A stretch of 10,625 bases of DNA from Oopsacas minuta (Eukaryota > Animalia > Porifera), in contig JAKMXF010000331.1 of the NCBI GenBank assembly GCA_024704765.1, positions 95,362-105,986 of the forward strand. The letters are read 5' to 3'. The notes below the pieces were generated by a model, which saw only the letters and a program-made list of their open reading frames with translations, was not told the DNA's origin and did no database searches. The translations under genes were made by a program, and so were the position numbers. This document shows, one piece after another, positions 3,571 to 10,625 of the stretch (positions are counted from its first letter, which is position 1; every line of letters begins with the position of its first letter).

Positions 3571-4601
3571 TATGAATGTAACGATATTTTGGGCCAGACC
3601 CTTCGGTAGCCGGATTAGGCAAGTTTAAATACACTGCTTCTCCAAAAGAAACGAAACAGTGTAAAATTGTGGCACAAGTGACAGAAGTACTTTTCCGAAA
3701 TTCTTGCCTTAGGCCCCTACACCCCCTCGATGAGCCTTAATGAACCCAAAAAAGGACTAACTTAGAATTGATCCAAACCTATTTAGGAAATTTAGGACTA
3801 GATATAGATTTCAAAAGATGATTCCAGCTCCAGAAGTTTGAGAACAATTACAGTACAAAATTTGTAAATATGCCATGATCATATCCTAACAAGACTAGGA
3901 CCAGTTATGGAACATGGATCATTTAAAGCGCTAAAAACCCCTTGAGGCGAAGTTACGAAATGTGCAAAAAATGTTCATATGTGAATAAGCCTACAAATGT
4001 ATTATAATACTTGTTTTCATCTCAAGAGGGTCGAGCATTTCAATTGGTCAGGGTGACTTTACAAAAAAATGGAGATACCAAAGTGGGCCCGTGAACTAGC
4101 ACGATTCCTATTAGTAGTCCAAATAGTGGCCAAGTTGAAACCTGACCAAACGGAGCGTGTCCTGAGGCCATGTAAATAATACTTATAATAGTAGTTAAAT
4201 CAATATTCAGGGGAAGGAATTAATCACTATGGCTAATTATTACGCAAGTGTAAACATTAGATCAACTTAAACATGCATGCGGGCGGGCGGTTCATTACAC
4301 TGATATACAACGTTTTTGATGATCTTCTTTCTCTATCATTTTTGCATAGTGTAGATATATGTTGGGAATTATTATCTGTTTTTCATTTTCAAGGGTACTA
4401 AAAGTAAGAACTCTCTATTTTAGCTATGTCGATCTTTTAATTGACTACATGGTCAAAAATATTTCTAAATTCAATTCTACACATCACCCTTATCCAATTT
4501 ATTTGGTTTCATTGCTTACATGATCTAAATTGCCTCTAATAGTAGTTATAATCTGTTTTATCCCACTCGACATTTAGTTTATTTTGTTCATTTTATTGTT
4601 C

Positions 4602-5178
4602 ATGGATTCTGGTTTGTAAAAATTCTCCTGAAAAGTTTTGTTATATTTGTGGGAGGTATACTACAACTGACCAACGGCAAAATATCACAAAGGCTGTAGA
4701 ACGCTGTTATTTCGCTTATTTTAGATGCCATCTTGGGGATCAAGATAAGCCGTGGGCTCCCACAATGCCTGAAAGACGCATGTGGTATGCTGGGAAGAGA
4801 AACATATTCCCGTTTGCAGTTCCAATGATATGGAGAGAACGAATGTTTCTTCTTTCGGAATGTTATTTCTGTAGGACAAAAATTGATGATATCACAAAAA
4901 AGAATAAATCCAGTATTGCGTATCCAGACGTACCGTCCGCCATTAGGCCAGTTCCATATTCAGAGGACCTACCTGTACCAGTTCCATTGGAAATATTGGA
5001 CATTTGCAGTGACAATGATAGTAGTGGAGATACTATCATTGTCGCTGCTCTCTGTTTGTCAGTTGCTAAGGAAGCTGAAATGGAATGTGGAATTCGTATT
5101 TGCAAAAATGTTTGTATCTATATATCTATGGTGTTAATCAGGAAAATAAACAAATTTCATAATTTGACTAAAGGTTAG
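4602..5178 (+). pseudogene. Truncated Chapaev3 transposase: N-terminal zinc-finger region, catalytic core deleted
   Basis: The frame of ORF 4765-5178 is open back to 4615: CKNSPEKFCYICGRYT...YFAYFRCHLGDQDKPWAP...PFAVPMIWRE...ECYFC...IAYPDVPSAIRPVPYSEDLPVP. This matches the CYICG, GDQDKxWAP, VPMIWRE, CYFC and YPxxPSAIRPVP motifs I recognise from Chapaev3 proteins. ATG at 4602 is out of frame by 1 nt, and the H..CxxC expected after WAP is missing. Confidence 0.82.
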
Positions 5179-5438: not shown

Positions 5439-5985
5439 TGATAGTTAATATTAGGATGATTTAGTGGGTAATAAACATAAATGTATGTTCAATTTTATAT
5501 ATTAAGTCGCATATTGGTGCAATCTTCCAACCAGAAAATTACAAATTCTAGACCTGTTGTGAATACTTCCTTAACCCATTTAAAAAGAATCCCCCTTCAA
5601 ATTCTTCAATTTCAGCTATTTTTATTTAATCATCAAAAACACTTTTTACAATTTTGTATATCAGTGTTATCATTATCTCATTATTCGTGAGGTATCAGCT
5701 GGAAAATTGATTCATTGACTTTATTCATGAAAATATGATAAATTAGAAAAATTCAAAAGAATATGAGAATAGGCTAGACAATGAAAAAGATACTTCTATA
5801 GCACTGTTATGTAGGATTTTGACCCGCAAGTAGCAATTCCAAATTAATTAATATCAAGATTTCATCCCTAGTCATATAGTATTCGTATTTATACATGTGT
5901 GACTTCCTAAATGCACACACTAACATTTTACTTTGTTTCTAGATTTCAACATCAACACTTATATTTACTTTTGCCATTTTTCATT

Positions 5986-6129
5986 ATGGATGCGACAGAG
6001 TATGAAGGAATTCGTGGATACCTTCAGGCGAATATTATCCCACCAGAAATCAAGAGTGATCGCTACAGAAAGAAGAATTTTGCCAGAAAGTGCAAGGGGA
6101 TTTACTTTCAAGAGAATGAGCTAATGAAG
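5986..6129 (+). pseudogene. Integrase gene coding exon 1 (YPYY-like N-terminal region)
   Basis: MDATEYEGIRGYLQANIIPPEIKSDRYRKKNFARKCKGIYFQENELMK, then donor AAG|GTATAT at 6130, phase 0. Pattern Y..I..YL....P......K.NF.RK...F....L resembles GIN/Ginger1 N-termini. Confidence 0.7.
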
Positions 6130-6346
6130 GTATATTCCTGAACTGATATTTTTGATTTATACTTATTTCCGGGACATAATTAGAAATCTTGAAGCAACTA
6201 CATATCTCCGAGGAAGCAAATATGTAGTTACCTCATTATATTTGCGTACCATAGGTAGATAAGAAGGGCGAAAACGCTAGGGGGCTCCTCTGCCCCTCAA
6301 TACTAGCTACAACCTCTGAGTTTGACTACAATAGTTTTTCTTGTAG

Positions 6347-6520
6347 ATTTTCAGAAAGATGAATGGCTGCGTGAAATACTTGGAGATTCCACTGGTCTCA
6401 GAAATTGACAACATTATCGGATTGTATTACAATGTCACTCATCCTGGAACCAACACAACCATGAATGGAATCCGAAACAAATATGGTTGGAATAGCATAT
6501 ACAATGATGTTGGGTACTAC
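6347..6520 (+). pseudogene. Integrase gene exon 2 (His half of the HHCC zinc finger)
   Basis: Acceptor TTTTTCTTGTAG (AG 6345-6346) and donor GTGAGT at 6521; 58 open codons, phase 0/0: IFRKMNG...LYYNVTHPGTNTTMNGIRNKYGWNSIYNDVGYY. The first His appears mutated to Tyr. Confidence 0.85.
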
Positions 6521-6583
6521 GTGAGTTACTAAATTACTTATTTCTTTCATGTATGATTTTCCAAGAAAATGTGGCCAAGAACA

Positions 6584-6689
6584 CAGACTTACCAACCCCA
6601 GTGATCCCTGGATACTCCGGATTTCACTTCAAATTCAGGGGAAAATATTGAAAATCCAGGGAAATTTGCAAAATGAGCTAGTAAGTCTG
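6584..6689. mobile_element. MITE (106 bp) with 13-bp TIRs and 6-bp TSD, in intron 2 of the integrase gene
   Basis: Left CAGACTTACCAAC versus right reverse complement CAGACTTACTAGC (11/13). AGAACA is duplicated at 6578-6583 and 6690-6695. Shares subterminal GATCCCTGGAT with the reverse complement of the right end of the 2856-3066 MITE. Confidence 0.85.
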
Positions 6690-6928
6690 AGAACAGCATG
6701 TATTTTATAGTTTGAGGTTATTCATCTTGACTATTCTACTGTATACAGGTTTATTTGTGCGAGTGTAAAATTAAAATTGTGCGATCTGATGATATTTAGT
6801 ATACCGGTATACAATTTTATCAGATGGAAATCTATTTGTGCGGTGCAACCAACCAACCATGTATCTAACAACTAATAATCCTTGCGGTAGTTAGTAATTG
6901 GGATAGGTAGTGGGAGTATTTCCATAAA

Positions 6929-6986
6929 CATATTTGCCAACTTGAGTGAAGAAAAAGCGGGACAGAATGCTAATTTAGTGGGACAT
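6929..6986. mobile_element. Orphan terminus of the same MITE lineage
   Basis: CATATTTGCCAAC (6929-6941; 12/13 to CATACTTGCCAAC), followed by GCGGGACA and GTGGGACA subterminal motifs. No partner end found. Confidence 0.5.
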
Positions 6987-7051
6987 CTGGAACGTAGCAA
7001 ATTACATTAGACTGGACTACAAACTAACAATTAAATCATTTCCCGTTCTAG

Positions 7052-7363
7052 ATCGGAATTTGCCATGACTGTCAAACCTCTGCTGCACTACCTCCTCAGG
7101 CACAACGAGAGCTTCAACCTATTCATCCTCCTGAAGAACCATGATGTCATTGTGGAATTGATCTCATATGCAATATGTCTCTCACTGTACTTGGATTTAA
7201 GCACATTCTTGTAATCGTGTGCTACCTGAGTAAATTTGTAATTGCCAGAACACTCAAGACTAAAACATCTAAAGAAATATTGGATTGTTTACAGGAAATT
7301 TATCTCTCATTCGGCTTACCTAACATCTTCCAACATGATCAGGGAACAGAATTCTCAAGCAAG
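7052..7363 (+). pseudogene. Integrase gene exon 3 (CxxC plus first two catalytic Asp of the rve core)
   Basis: Acceptor TTCTAG (AG 7050-7051) and donor AAG|GTAACT at 7364; 104 codons: IGICHDCQ...LQPIHPPEEP*CHCGIDL...KHILVIVCYLSKFVIARTLKTKTS...FGLPNIFQHDQGTEFSSK. TGA at 7142-7144 replaces the conserved Trp. Asp codons at 7160 and 7337. Confidence 0.92.
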
Positions 7364-7738
7364 GTAACTCATATTTTTTACATACTCGAGATTAGTAATT
7401 GTAAATGCACCAAGTAAATTATTCCCGATGCACAATGCAACTTACCATATTGGAAATACGTACGTAACATGTTGCATTGTCAATTGTCAGCGCATTGCTT
7501 CAATATATACCTTGGTAGGAAATTGTGCGTTCTGATGGCCATATTTAAGAAACCGTGTGGAAAATTGGATTTTAATTTATGTTAAATACTAATAAATAAG
7601 AATATACGAATTGATCCAACTACCTTCGGATGGAAAATTCACCTTATTAATCGTTTTATTTTTCTAACTATTCTTGTACAAGACTAAATACATGCACGTA
7701 GTTGATTGTTATCGTTCTCTTATTTACTTTCAAAATAA

Positions 7739-7844
7739 GAATTTCAAGAATTTCACAAGAAGATACATGTCAACACCAGAAGAACCACAGCATACCACCC
7801 ACAAAGTAACGACTTGCTGAGCCACACAACAAAATATTGAAAAC
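7739..7844 (+). pseudogene. Integrase gene exon 4 (YHPQ motif and catalytic Glu)
   Basis: FQEFHKKIHVNTRRTTAYHPQSNDL, then a 1-nt deletion at ~7817, then E-P-H-N-K-I-L-K (GAG 7819-7821); donor GTGAGT at 7845, phase 2. The acceptor is degraded (TAA at 7736-7738, or AG at 7738-7739 with one base lost). Confidence 0.85.
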
Positions 7845-7868
7845 GTGAGTACTGATGCTAAATATAAA

Positions 7869-7880
7869 TATATATATATA
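7869..7880. repeat. (TA)6 microsatellite in intron 4
   Basis: TATATATATATA read directly. Confidence 0.7.
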
Positions 7881-7927
7881 TTATAAGCCTAACATACGTT
7901 TAATACACGTCGTTTATAATTAGATAG

Positions 7928-8273
7928 CTTTGAATCAATTCTACACTTTTTACAAATAAAAAATCAAAAAATGCAATCTGATAGGAACACTGAATGGACA
8001 GAGAAATTACAGACTGCAGTACTAGCAGCAAATACTCAAACCAAAATCTCTACAAGCTACACACCAATTTTTCTCATGTTTGGGAGAGACTTTGATTCGT
8101 CTAACCTCCTCAATCTTATCACTTCTCCACATAACCCCAGATTACTAAACGAAACTGATACCTCAAATGCAAAGTATTAGAAGTGAGAATATTCAAATGG
8201 ATAAAGCGAACCACGTCCATTTGACTTTCCTATAATTGATAACGAATGGATAGAAATCTTTCTTCAAAACGCA
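7928..8273 (+). pseudogene. Integrase gene exon 5, 5' part (up to the mariner insertion)
   Basis: ORF 7971-8180 MQSDRNTEWTEKLQTAVLAANTQTKISTSYTPIFLMFGRD is a typical post-DDE integrase segment. It continues through a frameshifted linker to ...FDFPIIDNEWIE. The acceptor is ambiguous; AG at 7926-7927 is phase-compatible but gives a longer segment than I would expect. Confidence 0.75.
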
Positions 8274-8462
8274 TCAGGGCGCTCAATGAGTCTTGCGGGT
8301 CATGATATATCTCAGGAATTAGTCAAGTAATATATCTAACTTTCATATATTACAAGCCCATATAGTTGAACTCCATATACTGAAAGTTTCAAGCTTATTC
8401 AATACAAATTATGAATTTTTGAGATAGTTACGTGTAGTCAATTTATACTCACTGTTGAGTTT

Positions 8463-8800
8463 ATGGCTTCAAAGGATGATAATTTCAACCTCAAATGGCG
8501 AGCTTACATAGAGTTTCGCACAATACTCAAGATCCAGCCGGTACAGATCTTCAGCAAGTTACAGGAGATATTGTACGTGGATTGCCCTTCCAGATCTACT
8601 GTAGAGCGATGGGCTGCCCGTTTAAGATCTGGTGATGCTGTTGTCACAGATTTGCCTCGATCTGGAAGACCGGTATCCGCCACAACCTCAGAGAATATCA
8701 CAACTCATTGAAAGTATGGTCATGGAAGACAAGTGCATTACTGTCAATCAGTTAGAACAAGTATGGAGATTTCATCGGGAGCTATTCATACAATTCTGAC
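8463..8800 (+). pseudogene. mariner transposase N-terminal HTH region, frameshifted
   Basis: MASKDDNF...SRSTVERWAARLRSGD...DLPRSGRP...ENI, a shift at 8700, QLIESMVMEDKCITVNQLEQ (8701-8760), a shift at 8761-8762, then MEISSGAIHTIL running into the gap. Confidence 0.9.
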
Positions 8801-9227
8801 NNNNNNNNNNNNNNNNNNNNNNNNNNNNNNNNNNNNNNNNNNNNNNNNNNNNNNNNNNNNNNNNNNNNNNNNNNNNNNNNNNNNNNNNNNNNNNNNNNNN
8901 NNNNNNNNNNNNNNNNNNNNNNNNNNNNNNNNNNNNNNNNNNNNNNNNNNNNNNNNNNNNNNNNNNNNNNNNNNNNNNNNNNNNNNNNNNNNNNNNNNNN
9001 NNNNNNNNNNNNNNNNNNNNNNNNNNNNNNNNNNNNNNNNNNNNNNNNNNNNNNNNNNNNNNNNNNNNNNNNNNNNNNNNNNNNNNNNNNNNNNNNNNNN
9101 NNNNNNNNNNNNNNNNNNNNNNNNNNNNNNNNNNNNNNNNNNNNNNNNNNNNNNNNNNNNNNNNNNNNNNNNNNNNNNNNNNNNNNNNNNNNNNNNNNNN
9201 NNNNNNNNNNNNNNNNNNNNNNNNNNN
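8801..9227. other. Assembly gap (427 N)
   Basis: Run of N characters; ORFs crossing it are artefacts. Confidence 1.
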
Positions 9228-9228
9228 G

Positions 9229-9729
9229 GCGAAAGTTCCTAGGCACGACTTCAGAAAACCTAAGATTATGTATACCATCTTCTTCAGTAGTCATGGAATT
9301 GTCTTGCAATTACCTTGTGAGAGTGGCAAAGCTGTTACTGCTACTTTCTTTACAGAGCAAGTGCTTCCAAATTTGATAAAAAATATAGAAAAGTACCGCC
9401 CGAAAACCGGAACTCGAGGAATGAAGATTTTAATTGATAACGCCAGTTCCCATACAGCTAAGCTTACCAAAAATTTCTTGGTTGTAGAAGGGTTAGAATT
9501 ACTTCCCCATCCACCATACTCACTAGACCTAGCTCCATGTGATTTTTGGCTTTTCCCCAAGCTTAAAATCTACCTTCAAGGCAAAGATTTTAATGCATTA
9601 CAAGCACTCGGAACGGGTCTGTACCAGTACTTCAAATCCATCCCCGAAGAAGTGTACAGAAATGTGTTTTACAAGTGGGTGGAAAGGTTAAAACTTTGTG
9701 TATCTGCAGGAGGGGATTACTTTGAATAA
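9229..9729 (+). CDS. mariner transposase C-terminal catalytic half (open frame; first Asp lies in the gap)
   Basis: AKVPRHDFRKPKIMYTIFFSSHGIV...ILIDNASSH...HPPYSLDLAPCDFWLFPKLK...GGDYFE*. Exactly 34 residues between the Asp of DNASSH and the Asp of APCD. The canonical YSPDLAP motif reads YSLDLAP here. Confidence 0.9.
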   Translation, partial: AKVPRHDFRKPKIMYTIFFSSHGIVLQLPCESGKAVTATFFTEQVLPNLIKNIEKYRPKTGTRGMKILIDNASSHTAKLTKNFLVVEGLELLPHPPYSLDLAPCDFWLFPKLKIYLQGKDFNALQALGTGLYQYFKSIPEEVYRNVFYKWVERLKLCVSAGGDYFE

Positions 9730-9809
9730 ATAATATAGTGAATTAGTGTGTGTAGTGTTTGCATCATATTCTATGATATCACCCGCAAGGCTTATTGAAC
9801 TCTCTGGTA

Positions 9810-9897
9810 AAGCTGACAGGATGACTGCTATTGAAAACATCAAGGCCGGTTAGAAAGTTCAAAAGAAAACATATGACATCAAAGTTAAACACAACAG
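9810..9897 (+). pseudogene. Integrase gene exon 5, 3' part (resumes after the mariner)
   Basis: KADRMTAIENIKAG*KVQKKTYDIKVKHN matches the A..NI..AQ.KQK..YD motif of Gypsy/GIN integrases. TAG at 9851 replaces Gln. Donor AG|GTAAGC at 9898, phase 2. Confidence 0.8.
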
Positions 9898-10165
9898 GTA
9901 AGCAATAACGAAACACATTCTTGTTGTGATGTAACATAATGGAATTTCAATACATCATCTCTCACTAAATTCAATTAGATTCACTAATTGTTGCATAATC
10001 AGATAAATATGAAATAGTCTTGAATCGGAACTGATTTCTTGCTACATCAATTACATGAATTCTTAAATTCCAAACACTTGCTTTTAGTTATAAAATTTGC
10101 AGCAGTACAAACTGTAAGTAATTGGCACATTATAATTCTTTGTATAATCATTGTTGTAACTTTAG

Positions 10166-10211
10166 ATCAGAATTTGTGGAAGGAGACGAAGTACTTGTAC
10201 ATAACACAAGT
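10166..10211 (+). pseudogene. Integrase gene exon 6 start (truncated before a GPY/F motif)
   Basis: Acceptor TTTAG (10164-10165), phase-2 compatible (AG|A = Arg), then SEFVEGDEVLVHNTS, matching the F..GD.VLV motif. Similarity is lost after ~10211 and the frame stops at ~10251. Confidence 0.7.
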
Positions 10212-10625
10212 CAACAAAATTTAAATTCATTTTCTCATCAAGTATTAGATTAACATTTTCTAAGCTAGTTTTTTACGCAGAATTCAAATCTGTTTTCAGA
10301 TTCTTTCCAGCACGTTCAGTTACTTTTCCATCTACAAGTCAACGATTTTTATGTATTTCCTAAATTTTTCCTGTTATTTTATGGTAGTGGCTGTCTTTTT
10401 GTCTTCTTACATGATGGTCATCTGAAATAACTCAACGTTTCGATGTTTTTAGATTAATGCCAAGATAATATCAGTTATGATCCTAGCTCTTAGATATAAT
10501 TATTCACATTCATGCATGTATCAACTACTCACAAACTAAGGGGAAATACATATCCATCTAGAAGTATAAAGGTAGCTAACTAAATTAAAAGTGTTGAGAA
10601 TACGACTTACTTTTATATATCTTGT

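What the first reader, a model, noticed from the sequence alone, without database searches (positions are those of the whole stretch)
5986..10211. Hidden six-exon Gypsy-type integrase gene with no retroelement context (Ginger1/GIN-like DNA transposon or relic of a domesticated integrase)
Seen: five GT donors and mostly intact AG acceptors in compatible phases (0,0,0,2,2). Splicing restores H-x29-CxxC across intron 2 and D-x35-E across intron 3 (after repairing the exon-4 start and a 1-nt deletion), which strongly supports the exon model. The gene starts at its own ATG with a YPYY-like region and has no gag, protease, RT or RNase H upstream. Established: LTR retrotransposons normally lack spliceosomal introns in pol, whereas Ginger1/GIN elements are DNA transposons with Gypsy-like integrases that can carry introns, and GIN1/GIN2 are host genes derived from them. 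Inference: this is a dead copy of a possibly undescribed, intron-rich Ginger/GIN lineage. Introns even split the zinc finger and the catalytic core. No TIRs were found, so a pseudogenised domesticated gene is not excluded.
Basis: partly seen in the sequence, partly recalled or inferred. Interest (0 to 1): 0.8.

Follow-up and report, generated by a model that had tools for sequence, protein, structure and literature searches.

The report
Decayed Ginger1 transposon copy in sponge
The split integrase gene is real: it is the front half of a worn-out copy of a roughly 50-copy cut-and-paste "Ginger1" jumping gene of the glass sponge Oopsacas minuta, whose family is unusual in fusing the integrase to a USP-type protease fold.

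Summary
An annotated paralog in the same genome (P0004, LOD99_1838, Oopsacas minuta) uses the same junctions.

The transposon reading is right and the TIRs exist. The element starts at 5805 with a 25-nt TIR (family TGTTGCG...) after the flank GCAC. It ends 4.3 kb beyond the window with the inverted TIR followed by GCAC. Intact relatives are about 5.85 kb, with perfect TIRs, 4-bp GNNC duplications (9 of 9) and 105 termini genome-wide. Introns are copied along with exons, so the element moves as DNA. There is no RT, gag or LTR.

The window copy is dead. It has in-frame stops, a frameshift and two lost acceptors, and two other transposons are nested in it. The N gap (8801-9227) lies inside the nested mariner, not in an integrase exon.

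The family differs from published Ginger1 in four ways:
- six introns;
- a seventh exon with a USP deubiquitinase fold (Z up to 13.9) instead of OTU or Ulp1;
- GNNC targets instead of CCGG;
- short TIRs with subterminal repeats.

The scan has already found this family on other DNA of this genome (s1-304907 and others). This copy is ordinary; the family is a modest new variant.

The parts
5801..5804 (+). Left copy of the 4-bp target-site duplication (GCAC)
   Evidence: The same GCAC follows the right TIR of this copy at L041:4388-4391, which is C331 downstream of the window.
5805..5829 (+). Left terminal inverted repeat. Here it reads TGTTATGTAGGATTTTGACCCGCAA; the family reads TGTTGCG...
   Evidence: All copies begin here and have unrelated flanks. 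L033 has a perfect 25-nt TIR pair. The genome holds 105 such termini against 0 in the control.
5986..6129 (+). Exon 1: own ATG and a YPYY-like N-terminal region
   Evidence: Translation. It equals residues 1-48 of paralog P0004. GT donor at 6130.
6130..6346 (+). Intron 1 (phase 0, GT..AG)
   Evidence: It is conserved in 20 of 21 copies.
6347..6520 (+). Exon 2: the His half of the H2C2 zinc finger
   Evidence: Pfam Integrase_H2C2, E 4e-4 here and 2e-7 in copy L033.
6521..7051 (+). Intron 2 (phase 0, GT..AG); it splits the zinc finger
7052..7366 (+). Exon 3: CxxC of the zinc finger and the first two catalytic Asp residues. It is broken by an in-frame TGA at 7142-7144.
   Evidence: Pfam rve, E 1.6e-7, for 7145-7366.
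7367..7738 (+). Intron 3 (phase 0). The donor is GT. The acceptor reads AA here, where 21 other copies read AG.
7739..7844 (+). Exon 4: YHPQS...E, holding the catalytic Glu. It has a frameshift near 7813.
   Evidence: The exon is one base shorter than in L040.
7845..7958 (+). Intron 4 (phase 2). The donor is GT. The acceptor G is missing in this copy.
7959..8271 (+). Exon 5, first part. It has in-frame stops from 8178.
   Evidence: In intact copies exon 5 is one 408-nt exon.
8272..9810 (+). Nested mariner-type transposon. The core is 8274-9808; the TA duplication is at 8272-8273 (now CA) and 9809-9810. It holds the N gap at 8801-9227.
   Evidence: This stretch is absent from all other Ginger copies. 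Pfam HTH_48 and DDE_3. 29-nt imperfect TIRs. At least 40 copies at 94-96% identity. Ungapped copies have 228 nt where the gap lies.
9811..9897 (+). Exon 5, second part. TAG at 9851; GT donor at 9898.
9898..10165 (+). Intron 5 (phase 2, GT..AG)
10166..10205 (+). Exon 6, first 40 nt (SEFVEGDEVLVHN). The rest, which holds the GPY motif, lies beyond the second insertion, outside the window.
10206..10625 (+). Start of a second nested repeat, which runs on to C331:107708. After it the Ginger copy resumes and ends at C331:110286.
   Evidence: At least 40 copies at 94-95% identity. The Ginger sequence resumes at L041:1810. Termini and the TAA duplication were read.

Best explanation
Window 5805-10625 is the 5' half of one complete but dead insertion of a Ginger1-type cut-and-paste DNA transposon of the glass sponge Oopsacas minuta. 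The whole insertion spans C331:100166-110286.

The family element is about 5.85 kb. It has 25-nt perfect TIRs (TGTTGCG...CGCAACA) and several subterminal copies of GGGTCAAAATCCTACG. It carries one seven-exon gene. Exons 1-6 encode a Gypsy-type integrase with a YPYY-like region, H2C2, D,D35E and GPY. Exon 7 encodes a helical linker and a USP-fold cysteine-protease domain.

Shown: the element multiplied as DNA, with its introns, to about 50 copies, and it makes 4-bp GNNC target duplications.

Inferred: the spliced integrase binds the terminal and subterminal repeats, cuts at the TG...CA ends and integrates with a 4-bp stagger. The USP-fold tail plays the role proposed for the OTU or Ulp1 tails of other Ginger1 transposases, that is, removal of ubiquitin or a ubiquitin-like tag during or after transposition.

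The window copy cannot work. It carries stops, a frameshift and two lost acceptors, and a mariner and a second transposon are inserted in exons 5 and 6.
For: Copies and ends:
- At least 35 paralogous copies of exon 3 have 85% or more amino-acid identity.
- The whole unit, introns included, is 90-92% identical at DNA level to 29 other loci.
- All copies share the same left end with unrelated flanks.
- L033 has a perfect 25-nt TIR pair and subterminal repeats.
- 8 of 8 full copies, plus the window copy, carry identical 4-bp flanks, all GNNC.
- There are 105 TIR termini against 0 in the control. Some pairs lie 54 bp to 3.9 kb apart, which points to deleted derivatives.

Gene structure:
All six introns are GT-AG, and they are conserved in 20 of 21 copies.
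- Intron positions and the subterminal repeat are also conserved in a related element from another assembly, L049.
- P0004 hits Pfam H2C2 (1e-11) and rve (3e-10).

USP tail:
- Exon 7 has no Pfam hit.
- Its AlphaFold model (pLDDT 74) matches only USP deubiquitinases: Foldseek E about 1e-7 for the top 50, and VIA Z 12-13.9 over about 230 residues.
- NTC, CxxC...CxxC and HFY...YD motifs are conserved in 16 homologs.

Placement:
- In a tree of 93 integrase cores, all 10 integrases with OTU, Ulp1, UCH or USP-like tails are separated from all 45 RT-bearing ones by a single branch (SH-aLRT 86).
- P0004 is sister (support 100) to P0028, an integrase-OTU protein of the same genome.
Against: - The TSD sequence (GNNC, mostly GGCC) is not the CCGG/CCGT reported for Ginger1.
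- The TIR is shorter than the published 40-270 bp.
- The tail is neither OTU nor Ulp1 (PMC2836005).
- No named Ginger1 (Repbase) or GIN1 sequence was available, so the Ginger1 clade is defined here by architecture only. Only the quick tree finished, and the key branch has moderate support (SH-aLRT 86).
- Splicing rests on a gene prediction and on conservation. No RNA reads were examined here.
- The USP assignment is structural. Sequence profiles find no USP: PDB profile search gave 0 hits, and hhalign against the UCH-bearing P0153 gave E 0.08.
- No activity of either domain has been tested.
Confidence: 0.93

Rival explanations
1. A pseudogenised domesticated host integrase gene (GIN1/GIN2- or Imagin-like): single copy, kept for a host function and later lost.
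For: The multi-exon integrase has its own ATG and no retroelement context. By language-model features, the nearest ESM Atlas clusters are named 'Gypsy retrotransposon integrase-like protein 1'.
Against: There are about 50 copies at unrelated loci, each with TIRs and a 4-bp duplication, this copy included. The catalytic DDE is retained in the family. Codon-position differences between this copy and the others are nearly flat (0.071, 0.054 and 0.080 per site at positions 1, 2 and 3), which points to neutral decay.
Confidence: 0.02
2. A fragment of the pol gene of a Gypsy LTR retrotransposon whose apparent introns are unrelated insertions or chance.
For: Outside the sponge family, the best-scoring database hits are long RT-bearing polyproteins at about 30-33% identity.
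Against: No RT, RNase H, gag or LTR is found in any of the 5.85-kb copies. The intervening sequences have GT-AG ends in compatible phases, conserved in 20 of 21 copies and in another species. The ends are inverted repeats, not direct ones. The high scores of the polyproteins come from several matched stretches. The tree separates RT-bearing integrases from this clade.
Confidence: 0.02
3. A member of Ginger2/TDD, or of a separate and so far unnamed integrase-transposon superfamily, rather than Ginger1.
For: The TSD sequence, the TIR length and the C-terminal domain all differ from the published Ginger1 description (PMC2836005). No Ginger2 reference sequences could be put in the tree.
Against: The GPY motif and the YPYY-like region are Ginger1/Gypsy hallmarks. 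The sister family in the same genome carries an OTU domain. The family clusters with OTU- and Ulp1-bearing integrases. The TGTTG end and the 4-bp TSD fit Ginger1.
Confidence: 0.04

Closest known systems
Ginger1 DNA transposons (Bao, Kapitonov and Jurka 2010, PMC2836005), e.g. Ginger1-5_HM of Hydra
   Same: - Cut-and-paste element of 2.6-7 kb with TIRs starting TGTNR.
- 4-bp TSD.
- One transposase gene with GT-AG introns.
- Gypsy-type integrase with a YPYY-like region, H2C2, DDE and GPY.
- A cysteine protease of the ubiquitin or ubiquitin-like system fused at the C-terminus.
- No RT.
   Different: - Six introns, against a published maximum of four.
- The C-terminal domain has a USP (peptidase C19) fold instead of OTU or Ulp1.
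- The TSD is GNNC (mostly GGCC) instead of CCGG/CCGT.
- The TIR is only 25 nt, followed by subterminal repeats.
- The host is a hexactinellid sponge, a group not in the 2010 host list. The genome paper's main text and the three supplementary files held as text do not mention Ginger.
P0028 (LOD99_3154), an integrase-OTU protein of Oopsacas minuta
   Same: It is the closest integrase: 46% identity and sister with support 100. It comes from the same genome and has the same H2C2 and rve architecture.
   Different: Its tail is an OTU domain (local phmmer labelling), which is the canonical Ginger1 architecture. Its element ends were not examined.
P0153 (KAK3916962.1, Frankliniella fusca), an integrase + Peptidase_C48 + UCH protein
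   Same: It is an RT-less Gypsy-type integrase fused to a USP/UCH-family domain (Pfam UCH, E 1e-24). It lies in the same RT-less clade.
   Different: Its UCH domain is recognisable by Pfam and is accompanied by Ulp1. The sponge domain is not recognisable by sequence and aligns to it only marginally (E 0.08). That suggests separate acquisition or very deep divergence.
GIN1/GIN2 and Imagin, domesticated Ginger1 integrases (PMC2836005, PMC12863088)
   Same: Multi-exon integrase genes of Ginger1 descent.
   Different: Those are single-copy host genes without TIRs. Imagin has lost the DDE triad. Here the gene sits in a multi-copy element with TIRs and TSDs and keeps the DDE triad.

Membership tests
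Ginger1 | Terminal inverted repeats with TGTNR...ACA ends | tested here: met
   The TIR pair TGTTGCGTAGGATTTTGACCCGCAA is perfect over 25 nt in L033. The left TIR of the window copy is at 5805 and its right TIR at L041:4387. The TIR is shorter than the published 40-270 bp.
Ginger1 | 4-bp target-site duplication | tested here: met
   9 of 9 complete copies have identical 4-bp flanks.
Ginger1 | TSD sequence CCGG or CCGT/ACGG | tested here: not met
   The TSDs are GGCC (4 copies), GTAC, GGAC, GTGC, GATC and GCAC. The left flanks seen at the other loci also fit GNNC where the 4 bases before the TIR could be read.
Ginger1 | Transposase with an H2C2 zinc finger and a D,D35E integrase core | tested here: met
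   Pfam Integrase_H2C2 at 1e-11 and rve at 3e-10 on P0004. H-x3-H-x29-C-x2-C and D-x58-D-x35-E. The window exons hit the same families.
Ginger1 | YPYY motif upstream of the zinc finger | tested here: inconclusive
   Y12, P19/P20 and Y39/F40 are present in P0004. The fourth position could not be assigned without the reference alignment.
Ginger1 | GPY/F motif after the core | tested here: met
   KYLGPYTI in L033 exon 6 and in P0027; LGAYT in P0004. In the window copy this part lies beyond the second insertion.
Ginger1 | C-terminal OTU or Ulp1 protease domain | tested here: not met
   There is no Pfam hit. The predicted fold is USP. The function class is analogous, but the family is different.
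Ginger1 | No RT, RNase H, gag or LTRs; DNA-level propagation | tested here: met
   ORF and Pfam survey of the 5.85-kb element. Introns are retained in all copies.
Ginger1 | Integrase clusters with Ginger1 transposases rather than with RT-bearing Gypsy | tested here: met
   In the quick ML tree, one branch (SH-aLRT 86) separates all 10 protease-bearing integrases from all 45 RT-bearing ones. No Repbase references were available, and the careful search did not finish.
GIN1/GIN2-type domesticated integrase gene | Single-copy syntenic host gene without TIRs or TSD | tested here: not met
   About 50 copies with TIRs and TSDs.
Gypsy LTR retrotransposon | LTRs and a pol gene with RT/RNase H upstream of an uninterrupted integrase | tested here: not met
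Ginger2/TDD | Integrase groups with Ginger2 and Polinton integrases (PMC2836005) | not tested
The GPY motif and the OTU-bearing sister argue against membership.
USP (peptidase C19) deubiquitinases, for exon 7 | USP fold with a Cys box and a His box | tested here: met
   VIA Z 12-13.9 over about 230 residues against USP30, USP46, USP35, USP12, USP7 and USP1. Foldseek probability 1.0. NTC and HFY...YD are conserved. Sequence membership in Pfam UCH is not met, and catalysis was not tested.
Tc1/mariner, for the nested element at 8274-9808 | TA duplication, short TIRs, HTH plus DDE/D transposase | tested here: met
   Pfam HTH_48 and DDE_3, both below their gathering scores. 29-nt imperfect TIRs. 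TA at 9809-9810, with CA on the left. At least 40 copies.

The most novel reading that the evidence does not exclude
The USP-fold tail is a working ubiquitin or ubiquitin-like protease that the integrase needs in order to transpose. Ginger1 transposases would then have recruited three different protease folds of the ubiquitin system (OTU, Ulp1 and USP), which would point to a general requirement for de-(ubiquitin-like)-ation in integrase-mediated DNA transposition. The changed target (GNNC instead of CCGG) would mark a separate Ginger1 sublineage in glass sponges.
Probability: 0.35. Interest if true: 0.55.

Novelty: new variant of a known kind. Interest (0 to 1): 0.33.

Why it matters
For this window the result is housekeeping. 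A puzzling "hidden" integrase gene turns out to be a decayed transposon copy with two nested insertions, and the assembly gap does not affect it.

At family level the result:
- extends Ginger1 to a hexactinellid sponge;
- shows the most intron-rich Ginger1 gene that I know of;
- adds a third class of ubiquitin-system protease fused to these integrases;
- shows a different target-site preference.

These points bear on two questions. One is why integrase-type transposases so often carry deubiquitinase-like tails. The other is how intron-bearing Ginger1 genes became host genes such as GIN1 and Imagin.

The scan had already reported the family elsewhere in this genome, so this copy adds little beyond confirmation.

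Tried and rejected
- The apparent TIR of the window copy alone (TGTTATGTA at 5805 against TACATAACA at 10199-10207) is a coincidence. Other copies read on past 10205, and the true right end lies outside the window.
- I first read the copy as 3'-truncated. That was wrong: it is interrupted by a second transposon and resumes downstream.
- The 611-aa open frame at one paralog (L021/L039) is probably an artefact of N runs in that locus, not an intronless copy.
- A profile of the exon-7 family against PDB sequences found nothing. hhalign against the UCH-bearing P0153 was marginal. Pfam found nothing.
- The look-up of encoding contigs had no record for P0004.
- Rfam at gathering thresholds found nothing in the window or in three related loci.
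- The careful tree search did not finish in two 300-s runs, so only the quick tree is reported.
Each exon was searched by reference, pieces around stops were searched separately, and the naturally annotated paralog P0004 stood in for the spliced product.

Full report
**Scope and rules.**
The window is G000:C331:95362-105986. The genome is the 61-Mb, 365-scaffold assembly of the glass sponge Oopsacas minuta: database hits carry LOD99_ locus tags, and the assembly figures match PMC10280926. Exons were translated and searched one by one by reference, and pieces around stops were searched separately. A naturally annotated paralog (P0004) served as the spliced comparison.

**Observation.**
Exon 2 hits Pfam Integrase_H2C2, and the part of exon 3 after the stop hits rve. 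P0004 (LOD99_1838, 726 aa) is the gene model of a sister copy. It has seven exons and six GT-AG introns in phases 0,0,0,2,2,1. Intron 2 separates the two His from the two Cys of H76-x3-H80-x29-C110-x2-C113. Intron 3 separates D202 from E238 of D143-x58-D202-x35-E238.

In the window all five donors are GT. Three acceptors are AG. The intron-3 acceptor reads AA (7737-7738), and the intron-4 acceptor has lost its G.

**The gap.**
The stretch 8272-9810 is absent from every other copy of the integrase unit. It is a mariner-type transposon:
- Pfam HTH_48 and DDE_3;
- 29-nt imperfect TIRs;
- a TA duplication;
- at least 40 copies at 94-96% identity.

The N run at 8801-9227 lies inside this mariner. 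Both of its sides are collinear with ungapped mariner copies, which hold 228 nt (76 codons) there. The gap's estimated length is therefore too long, and the gap does not concern the integrase. The mariner sits inside exon 5, so the coding pieces on either side of it are one exon.

**What it is.**
A six-frame search of the genome with exon 3 finds at least 35 copies with 85% or more identity. At DNA level, 29 other loci align to window 5800-8271 and 9807-10204 at 90-92% identity, introns included.

All copies begin at the same base (window 5805, family sequence TGTTGCGTAGGATTTTGACCCGC) and have unrelated flanks. Other copies continue past window 10205. Full copies are about 5.85 kb. In L033 the ends form a perfect 25-nt inverted repeat, and the 3' end carries four further copies of GCGGGTCAAAATCCTACG.

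Eight of eight complete copies have identical 4-bp flanks: GGCC four times, then GTAC, GGAC, GTGC and GATC.

The window copy is also complete. Its sequence resumes downstream of the window after a second nested repeat. That repeat runs from window 10206 to C331:107708 and has at least 40 copies. The copy ends with the inverted TIR followed by GCAC, and the same four bases precede the left TIR at 5801-5804.

The genome holds 105 TIR termini against 0 for the reversed control. Some pairs lie only 54 bp to 3.9 kb apart, as expected for internally deleted derivatives. The element has no RT, RNase H, gag or LTR.

**State of this copy.**
The breaks are:
- TGA at 7142-7144;
- the intron-3 acceptor lost;
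- a frameshift near 7813;
- the intron-4 acceptor lost;
- stops from 8178;
- the mariner in exon 5;
- TAG at 9851;
- a second transposon in exon 6.

This copy differs from the others by about 7-8%. The others differ from one another by about 3-4%. Its differences are nearly even across codon positions (0.071, 0.054, 0.080). Among the other copies third positions change about twice as often as second positions (0.042 against 0.020). This is an old copy decaying neutrally, in a family whose source copies were under selection. About a third of the sampled copies keep exons 1-5 open.

**The seventh exon.**
Full copies carry a 422-codon open frame after exon 6. Two gene models (P0004 and P0027) splice it to exon 6.

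It has no Pfam hit. It has 26 homologs, many from other assemblies at 43-64% identity. Their alignment shows three conserved motifs: QxNTC, a CHxC...KCKSCG zinc ribbon and HFYS...YKYDG. The similarity starts at the splice acceptor, ahead of any conserved Met.

An AlphaFold model built from that alignment has pLDDT 74. It matches only USP deubiquitinases:
- In Foldseek the top 50 are all USP-fold chains, at E about 1e-7 and probability 1.0.
- VIA-align gives Z 12-13.9 over about 230 residues spanning model residues 150-421.

Sequence-level links are absent or marginal.

**Family placement.**
A full HMMER scan with P0004 found no other protein with both parts outside this sponge family. Among its hits are RT-less integrases fused to other tails:
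- OTU: P0177, P0160, P0142;
- Ulp1: P0174, P0166, and by local phmmer labelling the Ephydatia protein P0196;
- Ulp1 plus Pfam UCH in one thrips protein, P0153.

P0028 is a second O. minuta family, 46% identical, and carries OTU.

In a tree of 93 integrase cores, all 10 protease-bearing integrases are separated from all 45 RT-bearing ones by one branch (SH-aLRT 86), and P0004 is sister to P0028 with support 100. This is the quick tree only. Domain labels came from local phmmer searches. No named Ginger1 or GIN1 reference was available.

A related element from another assembly (L049, ENA ERZ25069837) keeps the same intron positions for exons 4-6, GT-AG ends, and three GGGTCAAAATCCTAC repeats at 36-bp spacing.

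**Comparison with the literature.**
Ginger1 as defined in PMC2836005 has these features:
- length 2.6-7 kb;
- TIRs of 40-270 bp starting TGTNR;
- 4-bp TSD of CCGG or CCGT;
- an integrase with YPYY, H2C2, DDE and GPY/F;
- an OTU or Ulp1 tail;
- 0-4 introns;
- hosts hydra, Aplysia, lancelet and aphid.

The sponge family meets the structural definition but differs in four respects: TSD sequence (GNNC), TIR length, intron number (six) and tail (USP fold). I found no paper that pairs Ginger1 with a USP domain. The O. minuta genome paper reports 15.4% DNA transposons, and neither its main text nor the three supplementary files held as text mention Ginger.

**Mechanism.**
Shown: DNA-level multiplication, TIRs, 4-bp duplications, an integrase with intact catalytic motifs in sister copies, and a USP fold with a conserved Cys/His signature.

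Inferred: the spliced protein binds the terminal and subterminal repeats, cuts at the TG...CA ends and integrates with a 4-bp stagger at A|GNNC|T-like sites. The USP-fold tail acts on ubiquitin or a ubiquitin-like modifier, as proposed for the OTU and Ulp1 tails in PMC2836005.

**Earlier findings of the scan.**
After my own fold result I found that the scan had already noted this family on other DNA of the same genome. A follow-up (s1-304907) gave the same reading and added a hammerhead motif in the 3' UTR.

I tested that motif in part. Full copies hold CTGACGA-GTCTACGCCGAGAC-GAAA at L033:5842-5900. Rfam Hammerhead_3 scores only 19 bits there, against a gathering score of 48.5. However, the stretch is 88% conserved in L049, where the rest of the element is about 74% identical. 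In the window's own copy that region falls in an N run outside the window.

**Verdict.**
The host-gene alternative is refuted. This copy is an ordinary dead insertion. The family is a modest new variant of Ginger1, and the scan has seen it before.

Noticed in passing
window 8272-9810, and L044 (C331:~90256-91694): The nested mariner has a 99.8-100% identical twin about 12 kb upstream, in inverted orientation. The twin is also interrupted by an N run. The family has at least 40 copies at 94-96% identity. The twin could be a very recent transposition or an assembly effect.
   Followed up: partly
window 10206-10625, continuing to C331:107708 (L041:1-1809): A second nested repeat with at least 40 copies at 94-95% identity. 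Its termini read CACAAGTCAACAA... and ...TTGTTGAGTTGTG, and it has an apparent 3-bp TAA duplication, which is a PIF/Harbinger-like feature. Most of it is an N run, and it was not classified.
   Followed up: partly
window 4597-5175 (+): An open 193-codon Cys-rich frame (CYICG...WAP...CYFC) with no Pfam hit. The nearest ESM Atlas clusters (0.95 and 0.92) are arthropod hypothetical proteins, and one of them has RAG1_imp_bd in 14% of its members. It may be the N-terminal module of a Transib/RAG1-like element. This is a lead only.
   Followed up: partly
L033:5842-5900 (3' UTR of full copies; outside the window): A hammerhead-like core, CTGACGA-GTCTACGCCGAGAC-GAAA. It scores below threshold in Rfam (19 bits against 48.5) but is more conserved across species (88%) than the surrounding element (about 74%).
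   Followed up: partly
left TIR of about half the copies (e.g. L002, L006-L008, L011-L015): A 17-nt tandem duplication, GTAGGATTTTGACCCGC, directly inside the left TIR. It adds one more copy of the putative transposase-binding motif.
   Followed up: no
G000:C188:459914-459989: Two facing TIRs only 54 bp apart. Other TIR pairs lie 1.6-3.9 kb apart (C306, C320, C331:207727-211648, C332:196320-198570). These are probably internally deleted, non-autonomous derivatives.
   Followed up: no
P0153 (KAK3916962.1, Frankliniella fusca): A thrips protein annotated as 'Sentrin-specific protease 1' is in fact an RT-less Gypsy-type integrase fused to both Ulp1 (C48) and a Pfam-recognisable UCH domain. This is a Ginger1-like architecture with two proteases.
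   Followed up: partly
L049 (ENA ERZ25069837, contig ctg19659): A related element in another assembly, from an unknown organism with 37% GC. It lacks exons 1-3 but keeps the intron positions, the USP-like exon (61% identity) and the subterminal repeats.
   Followed up: partly
L031, L037, L039, L041, L042: Several copies of the family and the window's flanks hold long N runs at varying places (for example C331:105987-107578, which starts right at the window's end). I could not tell whether these are assembly gaps or withheld stretches.
   Followed up: no
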